The translations under genes were made by a program, and so were the position numbers. Below are positions 1,703-41,378 of a DNA stretch of 64,000 nt, piece after piece (within the stretch, counting starts at the first letter, position 1; the number at the start of each line of letters is the position of its first letter). The notes beneath the pieces are model-generated. The model had not been told where the DNA came from and did not search any database. It was given only the letters and a program-made list of their open reading frames with translations. This DNA is from Euprymna scolopes (Eukaryota), in assembly GCA_053919585.1 (NCBI GenBank), contig CM132819.1; one strand, 5' to 3'.

Positions 1703-1745
<43 letters not shown>

Positions 1746-1746
1746 T

Positions 1747-1777
<31 letters not shown>

Positions 1778-1782
1778 TAGCC

Positions 1783-1820
1783 ACCACATACAGTACTGTT
1801 TCGCATCTCATCAGTGCGGC
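1783..1820 (-). ncRNA. Type I hammerhead ribozyme, second tandem copy (stem II reduced)
   Basis: Minus strand reads GCCGCA-CUGAUGA-GAUGC-GAAA-CAGUACUG-UA^UGUGGU. Core, palindromic stem III and a 6-bp stem I are intact. Stem II is collapsed to one G-C pair, 8 nt shorter than in the other copy. The cut site (1789/1788) is 210 nt from the other copy's site. Confidence 0.8.
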
Positions 1821-1993
1821 TAGGCAAGCAACTACCTCAAACTAGGATCGGACACCGAATTAACAATGTTTTTACATTGTACAAATACCTAAGCTCAGTT
1901 TGTTTACGCAAAGAGCATTGCTTCATACGCTAATAGCAATTTGTATATCACTTCCCAATATGCTCAACCCATGATATGTAGCATTATAGTAAT

Positions 1994-2037
1994 CCACATA
2001 CAGTACTGTTTCGCTGTTTCACAGCTCATCAGTGCGG
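1994..2037 (-). ncRNA. Type I hammerhead ribozyme (intact core, minimal/dimeric type)
   Basis: Minus strand reads CCGCA-CUGAUGA-GCUGUGAAACAGC-GAAA-CAGUACUG-UA^UGUGG. It has the canonical CUGAUGA/GAAA core, stem II GCUG(U)/(A)CAGC, stem III inside the perfect palindrome ACAGUACUGU (2000-2009), a GUA cleavage triplet (cut between 1999 and 1998) and a 5-bp stem I CCGCA/UGUGG. Confidence 0.9.
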
Positions 2038-2051
2038 CTAGACAAGCAACT

Positions 2052-2122
2052 ACCTCAAGCCAGGATCGAAAATCGACTGCCCAAATAACAGTTAGAGCTT
2101 CTAACCGTTGTGCTATTCGGCT
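2052..2122 (-). pseudogene. tRNA(Asn, GTT)-like Pol III promoter head of the hammerhead repeat (not a functional tRNA)
   Basis: Minus strand shows an A-box-like TAGCACAACGGTTAGA, an anticodon-arm-like TCTAA-CT-GTT-AT-TTGGG and a B-box-like TTCGATCC. Acceptor and T stems are poorly paired. Confidence 0.6.
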
Positions 2123-3263
2123 GCTGCTATGTGGGCAGTGAATTAAAACTGTTTTGACATTGCCCCAAAACATCAATATTATGCTATGGGACATTCCGGT
2201 CTGAAAGGGTGTAGTTTCTCATCACCAACAAGTTGGAAATGTCCTTTTCTGCCAACAGTGCTTAGAAAATTCTGTTGAAAACATTAAATGCATGCGGTGA
2301 CACGAGTGTATAGTCAGACACAAGACCGGTTTTTAATGTGAAAAAAATATTCTAGATCCCCGAAAAGAGGCATTCTGACTTAGAACAAAAAAAAAATGGA
2401 CAGTCCTTCGCAAAGAAATTAACAACCAAATACATCACGAAAACAGATATAACACCTCGCTCCACATGTCTTTCATACTTGAAAGCACCTTTCTATTCTG
2501 ATGATGGATAAACTTTGATCGTTGTAAGAAAATAATCTAACAGATTTATTCTATTGTTCAGGTAGGTACAGGTTTTCCTTCGATCTATTTGTGAATTGAA
2601 ATCCGGTTTCTTTCTAACGATGTGCAACCGTAAATATCTGAGTGACGGGCATGGTAACATAGAGAAGAGAAAGATGAGAGCATGGTTCATTCTTTAGAAA
2701 GTATAAATGGCATTTTTGAAGAGAAAAAGAAAAGTCGATCAGGATTGATTGGATAAAAATTAGATTTCAACAACGAGAAAGAAAAGATCCCTCTTGAAAA
2801 AGAATATCTGAGTTTTATAAATACCTGAAAGCTAATACAAGCAAAAGATTTCCATAGTGTGTAGCTAGCAGGCGCAGAGATGAGTGGCTGTAGAGAGCAT
2901 AAAAATAAGATGGGCGTATTCCATGTTTTTGCGACAGGAAAAAGCGACAAGACATGGAGGGGTTAATAAGGAGCAAGTTGAAGATCGTGGGCAGGTAGAC
3001 GAGAAAGCATGGACAAAGCATTTGAAATCGAAGAAAAGTTCTGCTATATGGAGAAAGACAAATATATGAAAGGGAAGAGAGGTGAGGGGCTGGGGAAAGA
3101 GGACAAAGAGAAGGATAAATACATAGACACAGACAGCAGTTAAATAAAGAATGAACGAAAGAGACGAAGAGAAAGGAGAAATACAGACGAACGGGTGCAG
3201 GGAGACAGAGGACACACAAAATGGAAAACAGGCGGAGAGAGATATAGACAGAAAGGAGACAGG

Positions 3264-3270
3264 ATATATG

Positions 3271-3316
<46 letters not shown>

Positions 3317-3358
3317 CAGAGAGAGAGAGAGAGAGAGAGAGACAGGCAGGACATATAT
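3264..3358. repeat. Fold-back compound microsatellite (TC)n(TA)n(GA)n
   Basis: ATATATGTC...(TC)n(TA)n(GA)n...GACATATAT is largely self-complementary and lies directly next to the gap. Confidence 0.85.
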
Positions 3359-3361
3359 ATA

Positions 3362-3739
3362 NNNNNNNNNNNNNNNNNNNNNNNNNNNNNNNNNNNNNNN
3401 NNNNNNNNNNNNNNNNNNNNNNNNNNNNNNNNNNNNNNNNNNNNNNNNNNNNNNNNNNNNNNNNNNNNNNNNNNNNNNNNNNNNNNNNNNNNNNNNNNNN
3501 NNNNNNNNNNNNNNNNNNNNNNNNNNNNNNNNNNNNNNNNNNNNNNNNNNNNNNNNNNNNNNNNNNNNNNNNNNNNNNNNNNNNNNNNNNNNNNNNNNNN
3601 NNNNNNNNNNNNNNNNNNNNNNNNNNNNNNNNNNNNNNANNNNNNNNNNNNNNNNNNNNNNNNNNNNNNNNNNNNNNNNNNNNNNNNNNNNNNNNNNNNN
3701 NNNNNNNNNNNNNNNNNNNNNNNNNNNNNNNNNNNNNNN
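3362..3739. other. Assembly gap (N run)
   Basis: Ns, with a single called A at 3639. Confidence 0.99.
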
Positions 3740-4066
3740 TATGATGAATTAGAACAGTCTAGAATTTCGAAAAGAAGCCACTGTATAGAGTGTACGTGCA
3801 TACTTAAAAGATAAGGGCATTATTTATAATTAGAGTGTCTGTGCGGACGAGTGAAGGATGGCGAAGAAAAACAAAATGGTGGATATTGTAAATATGTCAC
3901 CACACAAAGTCGCAAGTATTGATCAACGGAGAGCACCCACTCCTCCTCCTCTTGTAAAAAGAGGTGGGAGCTTAAAACAGGCAATTTTGTACGTCTTTAA
4001 ATTATGTGATTTCCACACGTACATTAATTAAAGAGAAACCTAGCAGTGAAATCAACATAGCAGCAT

Positions 4067-5435: not shown

Positions 5436-5697
5436 NNNNNNNNNNNNNNNNNNNNNNNNNNNNNNNNNNNNNNNNNNNNNNNNNNNNNNNNNNNNNNNNN
5501 NNNNNNNNNNNNNNNNNNNNNNNNNNNNNNNNNNNNNNNNNNNNNNNNNNNNNNNNNNNNNNNNNNNNNNNNNNNNNNNNNNNNNNNNNNNNNNNNNNNN
5601 NNNNNNNNNNNNNNNNNNNNNNNNNNNNNNNNNNNNNNNNNNNNNNNNNNNNNNNNNNNNNNNNNNNNNNNNNNNNNNNNNNNNNNNNNNNNNNNNN
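5436..5697. other. Assembly gap (N run)
   Basis: Ns. Confidence 0.99.
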
Positions 5698-36616: not shown

Positions 36617-37158
36617 GGGGCACAGGATACAGAACGAAAAATGGGGACACAGGATACAGAACGAAAAATGGGGACACAGGATACAGAACGAAAAATGGGG
36701 ACACAGGATACAGAACGAAAAATGGGGACACAGGATACAGAACGAAAAATGGGGACACAGGATACAGAACGAAAAATGGGGACACAGGATACAGAACGAA
36801 AAATGGGGACACAGGATACAGAACCAAGAATGGGGACACAGGATACAGAACCAAGAATGGGGACACAGGATACAGAACCAAGAATGGGGACACAGGATAC
36901 AGAACCAAGAATGGGGACACAGGATACAGAACGAAGAATGGGGACACAGGATACAGAACGAAGAATGGGGACACAGGATACAGAACGAAGAATGGGGACA
37001 CAGGATACAGAACGAAGAATGGGGACACAGGATACAGAACAAAGAATGGGGACACAGTATACAGAACGAAGAATGGGGACACAGTATACAGAACGAAGAA
37101 TGGGGACACAGGATACAGAACGAAGAATGGGGACACAGGATACAGAACGAAGAATGGG
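36617..37158. repeat. Minisatellite, 27-bp unit GGGGACACAGGATACAGAACGAA(G/A)AAT, ~20 copies
   Basis: Tandem array with blocks of variant units. Degenerate relatives continue to ~37290. Confidence 0.98.
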
Positions 37159-40100
37159 ATCAAGGGAAACACCAAGGGGAATGGGAACACAGGATTCAGA
37201 AAAGGGAAGAGAACACAACATACAGAAAGGAAAAAAGAACACAGGACAAAGAAAAGGAAACACGGGATACAGTGGGGCACAGGAATCAAATAAGGTGGAA
37301 ACATGAATCAGACGGGAACGGACAGACATACTGACAGATGGTGAAGCGTCAAACATTTTTAACAAAAAGCAAAACTATTCTTTTACCAGTTTTATATTGA
37401 ACACATTTGTTAGCAAAACATGCACATATGAAAATAAAATCGAAGTTTTCAACTATACCTTAAAAGGACCATGGAGCGATGTTTGTGCGCTATTATACTT
37501 TTCATCGACGAATATATTACTTACCTAAAAAACGAAAAAAAAAACGAGAAAAGTTAGTAACGAAATTTGATAATTGCGTAGGAATAGAAAACAAAAATTG
37601 TTCTGTAAGGGTGGAATTTTATGGCATGGATTAAAATGGTAGATAGAAGATTCCATAAGGCAGAAGTATTGATTTTGATGCAGGTCTGGGAAAATCGGGA
37701 GTGTAAACGGAAACTTAAGGAACACAAAAACAAAAAACACACGTATAGACACATACGATCTATACGTATATAAACGACAATACAATATTTATAGAGAATC
37801 TACTTTTAAATTCGTACACAACGGAAGTTTATATACTCAGATATTAACATGTATACATAGTTCATTATTTATGTACACAGTGAAGTAATAGATATATACG
37901 AAAATATACAGAGCTACACGCAAATCTAGAAAGATATGCACAGACTATGCGAATATATATTTGTGTAAGATGTCGTATGTATATAGATAGAGAGAGAGAG
38001 AAGGAGTCTCTCGCGACATATGTATGTATACATATGTACGTAAACACATGACTGTTTAGATACAGTGATACGGTACAGTGTTATAGATATACGCACCCGC
38101 GTTTTCACTGTATCAAACATAAACCTTACAGCGCAGAAGACACACGCTGAATCTTTGTCTAACGTGTATGTTTTCGAACAAAGGCTAGTCAAGAACGGTA
38201 AATGTATGCATATGCGAGAAGGAAAAGTGTGTGGATTTGGTGAAAGGGAGGAATGGAAGAATAGACATCTACAAAAAAGAACATACCGGACAATGTAGCG
38301 TCAATCTAGGACGCGTCGCTATTGGAGGCGTGTGTACGTCTGCTAAACAAATGGCGGAAAACAGACGCTAAAATAATGCTATCTTAAAAGACGAAAAATT
38401 TGGAACGTAAAGGAAGCAACTTCAGCAAGAAAGTGAGTGCATTTTGATACGTTGCAAAGGCCACGTAAAGTGCGTTTACACCGAAAACAAGTTTAGAATA
38501 AGCGAACAGTTGTATATCAGAATGCTTTAAAGAATCTGATTAGGATAAAGGCAGGATTTTGGTATTTGGACAAGGGATAAATAGTTAGCTATGTAAGTAG
38601 ATAAAAAAAGGACAAAGTGCAGATTGCAGAAGAATATCTAAAGAAACTGGGTATGGTGATAACTATTTTCATTTTCTCAGTTGTTCAATGTAGGGAAACT
38701 TAGAAAAGATATGACGCAATGACATTAGCGAAATGAAAAACCTAAAAATTCTTTAAACGCAAGAAAAAACGTAGTATATTATTTGATTGGTTGTAGCAGC
38801 AAATTCATAAGTTCAGTTTATGTTTACCAAAAAATACGTCACGGGATATAGTTATGGGATAGAGTAGAGGTTAAAATGAATGAACGTCTATTCCCCCCCC
38901 CCCGCTCTCGCAACAAGAGGTTTGTTTCGGGAGGGCGCAGTTCATCTAAATATTCTTGTTGTGAGAAGTAAACTCGAACTATAAGGCTAATAATGAAGTT
39001 TTTTTTTCTTTTTAATTTCCCTTTGTAGCCAGAAATAGGGGAAAGAAAACAAAACATCTCAACGGCTGTTACTAATAGAGAAAGATATCACTCTCCCTTG
39101 AGTCAACAACTTACAACGTATCGAAAGCCTTATCTAAGATGAGCGAACTACTGCCCACTCATACCAGAATATTATAGCATTTTTAAGTACCAATAAAAAG
39201 TTAGGAGTACAACATTAATTTAAAGGTAAAACATTTGATATTAAATTCAAAAAAATGTTAAGGCATTATTTTTATATATACTTTAAATAATTCCAACATG
39301 ATTTTTATTGAGAAAAATTGCTGACTTGTTTTCAAAGAAATAAAAATGGATTCTGGTGGAATTAATTTATTAAATACAATTTTGTAAATGTTAGTCTATT
39401 TTAGCTATTACATATATGTTAAATATTCGATTCACAGCAAGGAATAATTGAAATTTACGTTCATACGAGAACTACATCATGAATTTTATCAAGATAAACC
39501 AGGGTTAAATATAGCGGACAAACAATATTGAGTAAAAAAAAATAGTAATTCGCTCTAAGTCCCCACCCCTACTAAAAAAAAAAAAAATCTCAACACTAAA
39601 ATAAAAGAAACATGGAATAAATTATGTAGACTTCTTTTAGAAGATGAGGACTTCATCTTTTACGTTTTTCAATGTCTTCGGTTGCTGGTCAACCTGCGGG
39701 CAGGAATGGGATTTCTCTTAATATTTAAAGGAAAATTACAAACAGATGAATGGAGTTAGCATGCAACCCCATTCGATTTTCCCATATATTTTTTTTTTAT
39801 GTAACTGACTATGTATTACAATTCTCTCATTAACCGAGAGTTAATGAGCCTCTTCCTTGCCAGGAAAGTGACGGGACAAGGTAAGGGTCAGGAGGTTTCA
39901 TGCTCTTTCACCTAGAGGCAGATAGGGAGATCGACAGATAGAAAAAGACAGACCAAGTTAATCAAGATAGTATTTTTGCATCAACAGTATTGGATTCTTT
40001 TTCTCACACACAAAGGGCATACTATAAAAAGAACAATATAAACAAATGTAGAGAATACTGCAGACAAATCAGACCAGAGCATGAAAAATGGAAATATGAG

Positions 40101-40318: not shown

Positions 40319-41378
40319 GATCGAGAAAAGGCAGAGAGCTCGAGAAAAGGCAGAGAGCTCGAGAAAAGGCAGAGAGCTCGAGAAAAGGCAGAGAGCTCGA
40401 GAAAAGGCAGAGAGCTCGAGAAAAGGCAGAGAGCTCGAGAAAAGGCAGAGAGCTCGAGAAAAGGCAGAGAGCTCGAGAAAAGGCAGAGAGCTCGAGAAAA
40501 GGCAGAGAGATCGAGAAAAGGCAGAGAGCTCGAGAAAAGGCAGAGAGCTCGAGAAAAGGCAGAGAGCTCGAGAAAAGGCAGAGAGCTCGAGAAAAGGCAG
40601 AGAGATCGAGAAAAGGCAGAGAGATCGAGAAAAGGCAGAGAGATCGAGAAAAGGCAGAGAGATCGAGAAAAGGCAGAGAGCTCGAGAAAAGGCAGAGAGC
40701 TCGAGAAAAGGCAGAGAGCTCGAGAAAAGGCAGAGAGCTCGAGAAAAGGCAGAGAGATCGAGAAAAGGCAGAGAGATCGAGAAAAGGCAGAGAGCTCGAG
40801 AAAAGGCAGAGAGCTCGAGAAAAGGCAGAGAGCTCGAGAAAAGGCAGAGAGCTCGAGAAAAGGCAGAGAGCTCGAGAAAAGGCAGAGAGCTCGAGAAAAG
40901 GCAGAGAGCTCGAGAAAAGGCAGAGAGATCGAGAAAAGGCAGAGAGATCGAGAAAAGGCAGAGAGATCGAGAAAAGGCAGAGAGATCGAGAAAAGGCAGA
41001 GAGATCGAGAAAAGGCAGAGAGATCGAGAAAAGGCAGAGAGATCGAGAAAAGGCAGAGAGATCGAGAAAAGGCAGAGAGATCGAGAAAAGGCAGAGAGAT
41101 CGAGAAAAGGCAGAGAGAGAGCGAGAAAAGGCAGAGAGAGCGAGAAAAGGCAGAGAGATCGAGAAAAGGCAGAGAGATCGAGAAAAGGCAGAGAGATCGA
41201 GAAAAGGCAGAGAGATCGAGAAAAGGCAGAGAGATCGAGAAAAGGCAGAGAGATCGAGAAAAGGCAGAGAGATCGAGAAAAGGCAGAGAGATCGAGAAAA
41301 GGCAGAGAGATCGAGAAAAGGCAGAGAGATCGAGAAAAGGCAGAGAGATCGAGAAAAGGCAGAGAGATCGAGAAAAGG
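40319..41378. repeat. Minisatellite, 19-bp unit GAGAAAAGGCAGAGAG(C/A)TC, ~55 copies
   Basis: Tandem array with two main unit variants. Confidence 0.98.

What the first reader, a model, noticed from the sequence alone, without database searches (positions are those of the whole stretch)
1781..2168. tRNA-headed tandem hammerhead-ribozyme unit (retrozyme/Sm-alpha-like system)
Seen in sequence: on the minus strand a tRNA(Asn)-like A/B-box head is followed by a fully canonical type I hammerhead, and a second hammerhead copy lies downstream. The GUA cleavage sites are exactly 210 nt apart, both stems III are the palindrome ACAGUACUGU, and the 210-nt monomer has no T4 run on the transcribed strand. 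Established knowledge: minimal hammerheads with palindromic stem III typically cleave as dimers (Penelope-type); tandem type I hammerhead repeats (non-LTR retrozymes) yield small circular RNAs; Schistosoma Sm-alpha joins a tRNA-like promoter to a hammerhead. Inference: this is a Pol III-driven, self-processing, non-autonomous retroelement family (full unit ~283 nt), probably mobilised by Penelope-like elements. A read-through transcript could form a double hammerhead and excise or circularise a monomer. Caveats: this B box carries a TTTT that could terminate Pol III, and the downstream copy lost most of its head and stem II, so this locus may be decayed.
Basis: partly seen in the sequence, partly recalled or inferred. 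Interest (0 to 1): 0.88.

Follow-up and report, generated by a model that had tools for sequence, protein, structure and literature searches.

The report
Decayed hammerhead-ribozyme retroelement copy
This is one old, partly deleted copy of a very abundant, protein-less jumping element of a large mollusc genome that carries a self-cutting hammerhead RNA motif next to tRNA-gene-like promoter boxes; the kind is already known from blood flukes, mussels and Penelope-like elements, so it is a new family rather than a new system.

Summary
On the minus strand there is an intact minimal type I hammerhead (2038-1994). A second one (1820-1784) has lost stem II. The cleavage sites (after 1999 and 1789) are 210 nt apart, and both stems III are the palindrome ACAGUACUGU.

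It is one copy of a family with a 283-284-nt unit. The exact 45-nt ribozyme occurs 6,035 times in this 5.9-Gb genome. Its 3' junction with (TA)n occurs 6,868 times, against 0 for the reversed controls. Copies have a fixed 3' end 14 nt past the cleavage site, variable 5' truncation (0.07-2.5 units), (TA)n flanks and occasional inverted partners. That is the insertion anatomy of Penelope-like elements.

The "tRNA head" is weaker than claimed. A- and B-box motifs sit at tRNA spacing (1 found, 0.005 expected), but ARAGORN and the Rfam tRNA model reject it. "Asn" is a decay product: less decayed copies read GUC.

Pol III transcription, in vivo cleavage and RNA circles are not shown. PolyA RNA-seq gave read-through reads and no pile-up of read ends at the cleavage sites. 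At this locus only one of the two cuts is plausible.

This scan had already reported the same kind of element many times on other DNA of this genome. Verdict: new member of a known kind, and a dead copy.

The parts
1777..2168 (-). The whole insertion. It is 5'-truncated at unit position ~117, followed by one complete ribozyme unit end, a second shortened unit and the tail.
   Evidence: BLAST against a natural 282-nt unit: 2164-1999 = unit 117-282 (90%), 1998-1849 = unit 1-149, 1850-1796 = unit 213-267. This is the only copy of the family in the window.
2052..2128 (-). tRNA-like head. It holds an A-box motif (TAGCACAACGG, 2115-2105), an anticodon-arm-like hairpin reading CUGUUAU, and a B-like box (TTTTCGATCC, about 2072-2063).
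   Evidence: The A+B composite at tRNA spacing occurs once in the window against 0.005 expected. ARAGORN and the Rfam tRNA model do not call it.
1994..2038 (-). Hammerhead 1. It is intact, minimal, type I, and would cut after 1999.
   Evidence: The exact 45-mer is shared with 6,035 genomic sites.
1849..1998 (-). Body of unit 2 (unit positions 1-149). The deletion of about 63 nt that removed the A box and the anticodon-like part of the second head follows at about 1850/1849.
1784..1820 (-). Hammerhead 2. The core and the stem III palindrome are kept, but stem II is deleted (CUGAUGAGAUGCGAAAC). The nominal cut is after 1789.
1777..1788 (-). 3' tail past the cleavage site (TGTGGTGGCTAT). It is a decayed form of the family's TGTGGATGACTATA.
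1709..1776 (.). Compound microsatellite (TC)n-(TATC)n-(TA)n abutting the 3' end. It is the target or tail microsatellite of the insertion.
   Evidence: Almost all family copies end in (TA)n.

Best explanation
Window 2168-1777 (minus strand) is an old, 5'-truncated, internally deleted insertion of a non-autonomous retroelement.

Unit structure (shown). The 283-284-nt unit runs, from the cleavage site: a ~150-nt body, a ~80-nt tRNA-related module with A- and B-box motifs, and a minimal type I hammerhead.

Copying mechanism (inferred from anatomy).
- New copies are made by target-primed reverse transcription into (TA)n microsatellites.
- The nicked TA repeat anneals to an internal UAUA that lies 11-14 nt 3' of the ribozyme's cleavage site.
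- The reverse transcriptase then copies back across that site into the ribozyme, the head and the body.
- It falls off after anything from 20 nt to about 2.5 units.
- The 5' junction again tends to form at A/TA microhomologies.

Template (inferred). Every insertion crosses the cleavage site. The template must therefore be RNA that is uncut there or religated: a multimeric transcript or a unit-length circle.

Enzyme (inferred, partner not identified). The likely source is one of the abundant Penelope-like elements of this genome with GIY-YIG endonuclease.

Ribozyme (inferred, not shown). It has a palindromic, weak stem III and probably cuts as a double hammerhead in multimeric RNA.

Head (plausible, untested). 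It probably supplies an internal Pol III promoter.

This copy. It is dead as a source of monomers. Only hammerhead 1 is intact, the second head is deleted, and the copy is about 10-12% diverged from its relatives.
For: Family size and unit:
- 5,899 first-look matches. The top 30 loci match at 79-90% identity with a 283-nt offset between units.

Fixed 3' end:
- The junction CGAAAC..GUA^UGUGGAUGACUAUA|(TA)n has 6,868 exact hits against 0 for the control.
- The internal junction that continues into the next unit has 1,535 hits.

Unbiased sample of 30 insertions:
- Lengths are 35-712 nt (0.07-2.46 units).
- 5' start positions are scattered.
- (TA)n lies on both sides in about half.

Penelope-like features:
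- Inverted partial copies occur at L002, L012 and L025, and at the pair C3:161974528/161974767.
- PMC8557442 describes partial tandems, a 30-40-bp tail, inverted 5'-truncated copies and (TA)n targets as features of Penelope-like elements.
- GIY-YIG gives 15,395 first-look candidates, many in 804-808-aa open frames and in inverted pairs.
- A 5'-truncated Penelope-like C-terminus sits in the same (TA)n in L020.

Recent activity of the superfamily:
- A 284-nt subfamily is 97-98% identical between copies.
- Of 100 listed intact ribozymes on C1, 31 lie in 14 arrays, 12 of them spaced 284-285 nt.

Double hammerhead.

A/B boxes: conserved between subfamilies that are 81% identical overall.
Against: - No partner element sharing the ribozyme and tail was found. 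The one Penelope-like fragment I could read (L020) has a different 3' end and no canonical hammerhead.
- The PolyA RNA-seq raw reads show family reads on both strands. Many run from the tail into (TA)n, which is read-through of genomic copies. No read ends accumulate at the predicted cleavage sites.
- The unit RNA is not unusually structured: z = -1.45 for a young unit and +1.0 for the window monomer.
- The hammerhead shows no covariation. It is nearly invariant across subfamilies, so its conservation could reflect recent common descent.
- The head fails both tRNA detectors.
Confidence: 0.8

Rival explanations
1. The element is as described, but the A/B-box head is not a working promoter. It would be a vestige of a tRNA-derived piece or an RNA-structure module. 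Transcription would come from read-through of host or neighbouring promoters, or from a Pol II-type internal promoter as in Penelope.
For: - The Rfam tRNA model gives no hit at E<=10 on two heads, and ARAGORN finds 0 of 40 at default settings.
- The B-like box has a mismatch or extra T at the G53 position.
- 5' ends upstream of the A box are spread out, and the recurrent positions are explained by A/TA microhomology.
- RNA reads occur on both strands and run into flanking (TA)n.
- An alternative hairpin (GACUG/CGGUC, extended to about 12 bp) is kept between subfamilies, while the anticodon-arm pairing is not.
Against: - The A+B composite at tRNA spacing is expected 0.005 times per window, and it is conserved between subfamilies.
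- At an 80% threshold ARAGORN of 40 heads against 3 of 200 shuffles.
- Intact units lack T4 on the sense strand, although 25-40% of shuffles do too.
- The Sm-alpha precedent of a tRNA-related hammerhead SINE (PMC2770079).
Confidence: 0.35
2. These are not a separate family. They would be solo or partial pseudo-LTRs of an autonomous Penelope-like element that carries the same ribozyme.
For: - Penelope-like elements carry hammerheads in their pLTRs and leave partial tandems with a tail (PMC8557442).
- Such elements are abundant here.
- A 2026 preprint derives vertebrate retrozymes from the pLTRs of these elements (10.64898/2026.07.22.740005).
Against: - In 60 loci the ribozymes are spaced 210-316 nt with no ORF between them.
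- Among the first 100 exact ribozymes and the first 100 terminal junctions listed on C1, no same-strand pairs are spaced 2-5 kb.
- The unit has its own body and head.
Confidence: 0.1
3. The local two-ribozyme arrangement is a small DNA-level tandem duplication or satellite, not a product of reverse transcription.
For: The second unit is shorter (210 nt) and carries deletions, as slippage or unequal exchange could produce.
Against: - The same layout of partial unit, full unit and tail recurs at thousands of dispersed sites with an identical 3' end.
- Deletions at microhomologies in last units are seen elsewhere, for example ACTGT in L010 and also L003, L025 and L028. They fit template jumps by a reverse transcriptase.
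Confidence: 0.05

Closest known systems
Metazoan non-LTR retrozymes (Cervera & de la Pena 2020, PMC7229834; review PMC7761336)
   Same: Both have ORF-less units of 170-400 nt in short tandems, each with a type I hammerhead. Both have a weak helix III that favours dimeric cleavage. Mobilisation by Penelope-like elements is proposed for both. A mollusc example (mussel) is known.
   Different: Here most copies are less than one unit, with a fixed 3' end in (TA)n. The unit carries A/B-box motifs, and those papers mention no tRNA-like promoter. RNA circles are not shown for this family.
Schistosoma Sm-alpha / Sj-alpha SINE-like elements (PMC2770079; Ferbeyre et al. 1998 from my own knowledge)
   Same: Both pair a tRNA-related Pol III-type head with a hammerhead in a ~300-nt high-copy element that occurs dispersed and in tandem.
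   Different: There is no sequence relationship. Stem II here is GCUGUGAAACAGC, not the Schistosoma one. Sm-alpha heads are recognised as tRNA-Gln by tRNAscan (PMC2770079), whereas this head fails ARAGORN and Rfam. The host phylum differs. The (TA)n-specific, tail-bearing insertion anatomy is documented here.
Hammerheads and insertion anatomy of EN+ Penelope-like elements (Craig et al. 2021, PMC8557442; preprint 10.64898/2026.07.22.740005)
   Same: Both have a hammerhead near the 3' end, partial tandems, a short tail beyond the repeat, inverted 5'-truncated partners and a (TA)n target bias.
   Different: This element has no RT/GIY-YIG ORF and a unit of only 283 nt. The partner element was not identified.
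Canonical tRNA-derived SINEs
   Same: Both have internal A and B boxes, no coding capacity, a high copy number and dependence on another element's reverse transcriptase.
   Different: The head is in the 3' half of the unit and not at a defined 5' end. Copies are mostly 5'-truncated rather than full length. There is no LINE-derived tail or A-rich/T-run end. Multi-unit copies occur.

Membership tests
Hammerhead ribozyme, type I | Conserved core: CUGAUGA, GAAA, the A15.1-U16.1 pair and an NUH cleavage triplet | tested here: met
   Both copies keep CUGAUGA..GAAAC..GUA. The motif is expected 0.05 times per window.
Hammerhead ribozyme, type I | Three helices, with stem I open and stems II and III closed | tested here: met
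   HH1 has stem I CCGCA/UGUGG, stem II of 5 bp and stem III of 3-4 bp (or 10 bp as a dimer). HH2 has lost stem II, so it does not meet this feature.
Hammerhead ribozyme, type I | Score at or above the Rfam gathering threshold | tested here: not met
   0 hits at gathering score. The best hit is Hammerhead_3 at 20.1-22.4 bits against a 48.5-bit cut-off. From my own knowledge, variants with a minimal stem III are known to escape these models.
Hammerhead ribozyme, type I | Self-cleavage at the predicted site | tested here: inconclusive
   No pile-up of read ends at the cleavage sites in polyA RNA-seq. About 8 of 36 TA-flanked 5' ends start at +1, but TA microhomology confounds this. An in vitro assay is not possible with these tools.
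Non-LTR retrozyme | Short tandem units, each with a hammerhead and no ORF | tested here: met
   Spacing is 283-285 nt in multi-unit copies, and no long ORFs are present. Only about 17-27% of insertions hold more than one unit.
Non-LTR retrozyme | Unit-length circular RNA in vivo | tested here: inconclusive
   Family sequence is present in RNA runs. However, laid reads include read-through into (TA)n, and a tandem reference cannot separate circles from multimers.
Penelope-like-element-dependent non-autonomous element | Insertion scars of these elements: (TA)n target, tail beyond the repeat, 5' truncation, inverted partial copies | tested here: met
   compared with PMC8557442.
Penelope-like-element-dependent non-autonomous element | An autonomous partner that shares the 3' module | not tested
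GIY-YIG ORFs are abundant. The single Penelope-like fragment I read (L020) does not share the 3' end.
tRNA-derived SINE head | Recognisable tRNA cloverleaf or homology | tested here: not met
   ARAGORN finds 0 of 60 loci and 0 of 40 heads at default settings. The Rfam tRNA model gives no hit at E<=10 on L007 and L054 heads. The host tRNA-Asn anticodon arm matches 16 of 27 positions.
tRNA-derived SINE head | A and B boxes at tRNA spacing | tested here: met
   1 match against 0.005 expected. 22 of 40 heads keep the A motif and 12 of 40 keep the TTCGA..C motif, with a G53 mismatch or extra T in the B box.
tRNA-derived SINE head | Copies start at a defined transcription start upstream of the A box | tested here: not met
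   5' ends are spread out. About 6 of 34 lie at (A)GCAGCC, a site of A/TA microhomology.

The most novel reading that the evidence does not exclude
The genome may keep a large fossil record of circle-templated retrotransposition. All of the at least 6,868 insertions cross the ribozyme's cleavage site and end at an internal UAUA 11-14 nt beyond it. Insert lengths decay smoothly from 0.07 to more than 2 units without a full-length class. This is what rolling reverse transcription of a religated, unit-length circular RNA primed by a nicked (TA)n would give. The Pol III-type boxes travel inside the circle, so that any copy longer than about 0.45 units is a potential new source. If the host is a decapodiform cephalopod (a guess from genome size and the number of chromosome-scale contigs), it would also be a large SINE-like class in a group reported to have almost no SINEs (PMC13218726).
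Probability: 0.3. Interest if true: 0.65.

Novelty: new member of a known kind. Interest (0 to 1): 0.35.

Why it matters
Taken alone, this locus is a dead copy.

The family matters modestly. It adds a second, unrelated host lineage to the design of promoter boxes plus a hammerhead, known so far from schistosomes. It ties that design to insertion scars typical of Penelope-like elements. It also offers thousands of dated insertions from which the template form (multimer or circle), the priming site and the microhomology rules of the reverse transcriptase can be read.

It may also mean that repeat annotations of this group of molluscs miss a SINE-like class with thousands of copies.

Tried and rejected
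- Rfam at gathering score on the whole window gave nothing.
- ARAGORN on the window and on 60 loci found no tRNA.
- The Rfam tRNA model on two short head segments at E<=10 gave no hit.
- tRNA(Asn) origin is rejected. The host Asn anticodon arm differs from the head. Less decayed heads read GUC and are called Asp only at lowered ARAGORN thresholds, with a non-canonical T arm.
- Covariation in the hammerhead is not assessable. Differences between copies are decay, mostly CpG transitions.
- Structured-rod RNA is not supported: z = -1.45 and +1.0.
- Absence of T4 as a Pol III signature is not significant, because 25-40% of shuffles also lack T4.
- RNA evidence for cleavage or circles comes from one read-laying run on a young three-unit copy (L054). 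It showed reads on both strands, loose ends into (TA)n and no pile-up of ends at the cleavage sites. The libraries were polyA-selected, so this neither supports nor refutes.
- A class of 5' ends at a Pol III start site was not found.
- A 5' end class at the cleavage site is mildly enriched but confounded by TA microhomology.
- The partner Penelope-like element was not found. No more genome letters could be fetched.
- The Penelope-like fragment in L020 has a different 3' end. Pfam found nothing on its two pieces. The Atlas gave HTH_animal/GIY-YIG clusters, which is a lead only.
- ORFs next to the element (2815-3801 and others) are artefacts of N runs and minisatellites, with no Pfam hits.

Full report
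**What is at 1781-2168**

Read on the minus strand, the stretch holds, in order:
- a tRNA-like segment with an A-box motif (TAGCACAACGG, 2115-2105) and a B-like box (about 2072-2063);
- a complete minimal type I hammerhead at 2038-1994: GCCGCA / CUGAUGA / G-CUGU-GAA-ACAG-C / GAAA / C-AGUACUG-UA^UGUGG;
- about 150 nt of body;
- a remnant of a second head;
- a second hammerhead at 1820-1784;
- a 12-nt tail;
- a (TC)n-(TATC)n-(TA)n microsatellite (1776-1709).

The cuts would fall after 1999 and after 1789, 210 nt apart. Both stems III are ACAGUACUGU. The 210-nt monomer has no T4 run. TTTT sits at 2148 and at 2072, in the B-like box.

The second ribozyme reads CUGAUGAGAUGCGAAAC. Stem II is gone. 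Unit 2 also lacks about 63 nt of head.

The core motif is expected 0.05 times per window. Rfam does not report it at gathering score. In E-value mode it aligns only as a 20-22-bit partial match to Hammerhead_3.

**It is one copy of a very large family**

- The 388-nt query found 5,899 first-look candidates in the window's own 5.9-Gb assembly. The best 30 loci match at 79-90% identity and show a second alignment offset by 283 nt.
- The exact 45-nt ribozyme of the window occurs 6,035 times, against 0 for the reversed control.
- Cutting the loci against a natural 282-nt unit shows the common layout: a 5'-truncated unit, one full unit, then 14 nt of the next unit, then (TA)n.
- The 33-nt junction CGAAACAGTACTGTA^TGTGGATGACTATA-TATA occurs 6,868 times, against 0 for the control.
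- The same ribozyme continuing into the next unit occurs 1,535 times.

**An unbiased sample shows retrotransposition scars**

The first 30 junction hits along contig C1 (L031-L060) were not selected for similarity to the window. Their features:
- Inserts are 35 to 712 nt long, or 0.07 to 2.46 units.
- About three quarters are shorter than one unit.
- The 5' start positions are scattered over the unit.
- About half have (TA)n on both sides.
- Recurrent 5' positions (unit 11-13, 111, 217) begin with TA/AT. The 5' junction, like the 3' one, therefore forms at microhomology with the TA repeat.

Inverted partial copies occur at L002, L012 and L025. An inverted pair truncated at the same position lies at C3:161.97 Mb.

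Craig et al. (PMC8557442) describe partial tandems, a short tail beyond the repeat, inverted 5'-truncated partners and a (TA)n target bias as the marks of endonuclease-bearing Penelope-like elements. A 2026 preprint derives vertebrate retrozymes from the pLTRs of such elements.

**What the anatomy says about the template**

The last element-specific bases are ...GUA^UGUGGAUGAC, followed by UAUA that merges into the microsatellite. In the unit the sequence continues UAUAAUGC.

Reverse transcription therefore starts at an internal UAUA 11-14 nt downstream of the cleavage site and always copies across that site, even in the shortest inserts. The template is thus RNA that is uncut or religated at that site: a multimer or a circle. 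This is inference. I could not tell the two apart.

**Ribozyme mode**

- Two copies of the core cofold into a double hammerhead, with a 10-bp intermolecular stem III and stems I formed in trans. The energy is -34.2 kcal/mol against -25.2 for two monomers. This fits the weak helix III and dimeric behaviour described for many animal type I hammerheads (PMC7761336).
- In the minimum-free-energy fold of the window transcript 2045-1777, the two palindromes pair. The enzyme half of hammerhead 1 assembles on the site after 1789.
- The reciprocal half lacks stem II.
- This locus could at best be cut once, so excision of the 210-nt monomer is unlikely.

**The head**

Evidence for a tRNA relationship:
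- The A+B composite at tRNA spacing occurs once in the window against 0.005 expected.
- Both boxes are kept between the window's 283-nt subfamily and a young 284-nt subfamily that is only 81% identical overall.

Evidence against a recognisable tRNA:
- ARAGORN finds no tRNA in the window, in 60 loci or in 40 extracted heads. At an 80% threshold it of 40 heads against 3 of 200 shuffles, as Asp(GUC) with a non-canonical T arm.
- The Rfam tRNA model gives nothing at E<=10 on an old and on a young head.
- The host's own tRNA-Asn anticodon arm (687 pattern hits) matches the head at 16 of 27 positions.
- The window's GUU is a decayed form. Less decayed copies read CUGUCGU or CUGCCGU.
- The anticodon-arm pairing is not kept in the young subfamily. 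A different hairpin (GACUG/CGGUC) is kept.

I read the head as a degenerate tRNA-related module that kept promoter-like boxes. "Asn" is not supported.

A Pol III role is untested:
- 5' ends upstream of the A box show no sharp class.
- Lack of T4 in intact units is not significant.

**RNA**

- Family words are present in several RNA runs of the same organism label and of mollusc and invertebrate metatranscriptomes.
- I laid two polyA raw-read runs and two contig sets on a young three-unit copy, L054:700-1650.
- Reads map on both strands.
- Hundreds run from the tail into (TA)n, which is read-through of genomic copies.
- No pile-up of read ends was reported at 947, 1231 or 1515.
- PolyA selection disfavours cleaved or circular RNA, so this neither supports nor refutes cleavage.

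A genomic proxy gave a mild signal. Among about 36 TA-flanked 5' ends within 30 nt of the cleavage site, about 8 start at +1. The UA at -2/-1 offers the same microhomology that shapes other junctions.

**Partner**

- GIY-YIG gives 15,395 first-look candidates. All 150 that were scored exceed the cut-off. Many lie in open frames of 804-808 aa, often as inverted pairs a few kb apart. Young Penelope-like elements with endonuclease are therefore abundant.
- In L020 a 5'-truncated Penelope-like C-terminus starts in the very (TA)n where the ribozyme element ends, and itself ends at another (TA)n. It has a YRKPT-type motif, a GIY-YIG motif and one in-frame stop. Its 3' UTR has no canonical hammerhead and no shared tail.
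- No kb-spaced same-strand ribozyme pairs appear among the listed sites on C1. This ribozyme is therefore not the pLTR of an abundant autonomous element.

**Comparison and novelty**

The element works like an animal non-LTR retrozyme (PMC7229834). In design it resembles the schistosome Sm-alpha/Sj-alpha elements, which combine a tRNA-related SINE head with a hammerhead (PMC2770079). The neighbouring insertion mechanics are those of Penelope-like elements.

I found no paper in the held library that links hammerheads or retrozymes with squid or cuttlefish. The host's identity is not established. This is a guess.

This scan had already reported the same kind of element many times on other DNA of this genome. 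My tests agree with those notes on the (TA)n targeting and the Penelope-like scars. They are more reserved on the tRNA identity and on in vivo cleavage.

**Verdict**

This is a new member of a known kind, and this copy is decayed. Interest 0.35.

Noticed in passing
L061-L090 (G000:C11:1.68-2.16 Mb): A very large tandem array of tRNA-Thr genes, mostly TGT, with AGT/CGT variants and Lys(TTT)-like derivatives. ARAGORN made 627 calls in 30 overlapping 3-kb loci, at a period of about 144 bp. The tRNA family search had 506,012 first-look candidates genome-wide.
   Followed up: partly
G000:C32:9.765-9.787 Mb and C37:2.64-2.70 / 13.55-13.57 Mb: Tandem arrays of the tRNA-Asn anticodon-arm pattern at a period of about 222 bp. 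There are 687 pattern hits in the genome.
   Followed up: no
L020:1962-2987 (+): A 5'-truncated Penelope-like element C-terminus with a GIY-YIG motif and an in-frame stop at 2465-2467. It is inserted in the same (TA)n as a ribozyme element and ends at (TA)n at 2988. Its 3' UTR holds only a degenerate core-like string (CTGTTGAG..GATCGAAAC).
   Followed up: partly
L020:346-395 (+): A second, unrelated hammerhead type lies between two TA runs: CTGATGAG-AAGAAA-AGTA-TTTCTT-CGAAAC followed by the palindrome TCCGCGGA. It probably belongs to another small element.
   Followed up: no
window 1776-1709; L017 and L021 3' ends: In the window copy and in 2 of 30 related copies, a (TC)n run lies between the element's tail and the (TA)n. 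L016 has (GA)n after a short TA run. Whether this is the structure of the target or stuttering at the start of reverse transcription is open.
   Followed up: no
L010, L003, L025, L028 (last units): Internal deletions in the last unit join short repeated strings, for example ACTGT of the anticodon-like loop to ACTGT of stem III in L010. This is like the head deletion in the window's unit 2 and suggests template jumps.
   Followed up: partly
L003:404-520 (-): A 5S rRNA match at 55.7 bits, above the gathering score, about 1 kb from a ribozyme element. It may be a 5S gene, a pseudogene or a 5S-derived repeat.
   Followed up: no
window 18790-19018, 36617-37201, 40319-41378, 60298-61912: Four minisatellites with periods of 30, 27, 19 and 24 nt, up to 66 copies and 95-98% matches. 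They create the long spurious ORFs of the window.
   Followed up: no
window 3362-3739 and 5436-5697: N runs. The 328-aa ORF at 2815-3801 next to the element is an artefact of reading through them.
   Followed up: yes
L054:700-795: An unrelated flanking repeat with very high, strongly strand-biased depth in polyA RNA-seq: about 800 against about 150 reads.
   Followed up: no
window 22127-22156 (-): A second match to CTGATGA..CGAAAC, with no convincing stem II and no similarity to the family. It is probably chance.
   Followed up: partly
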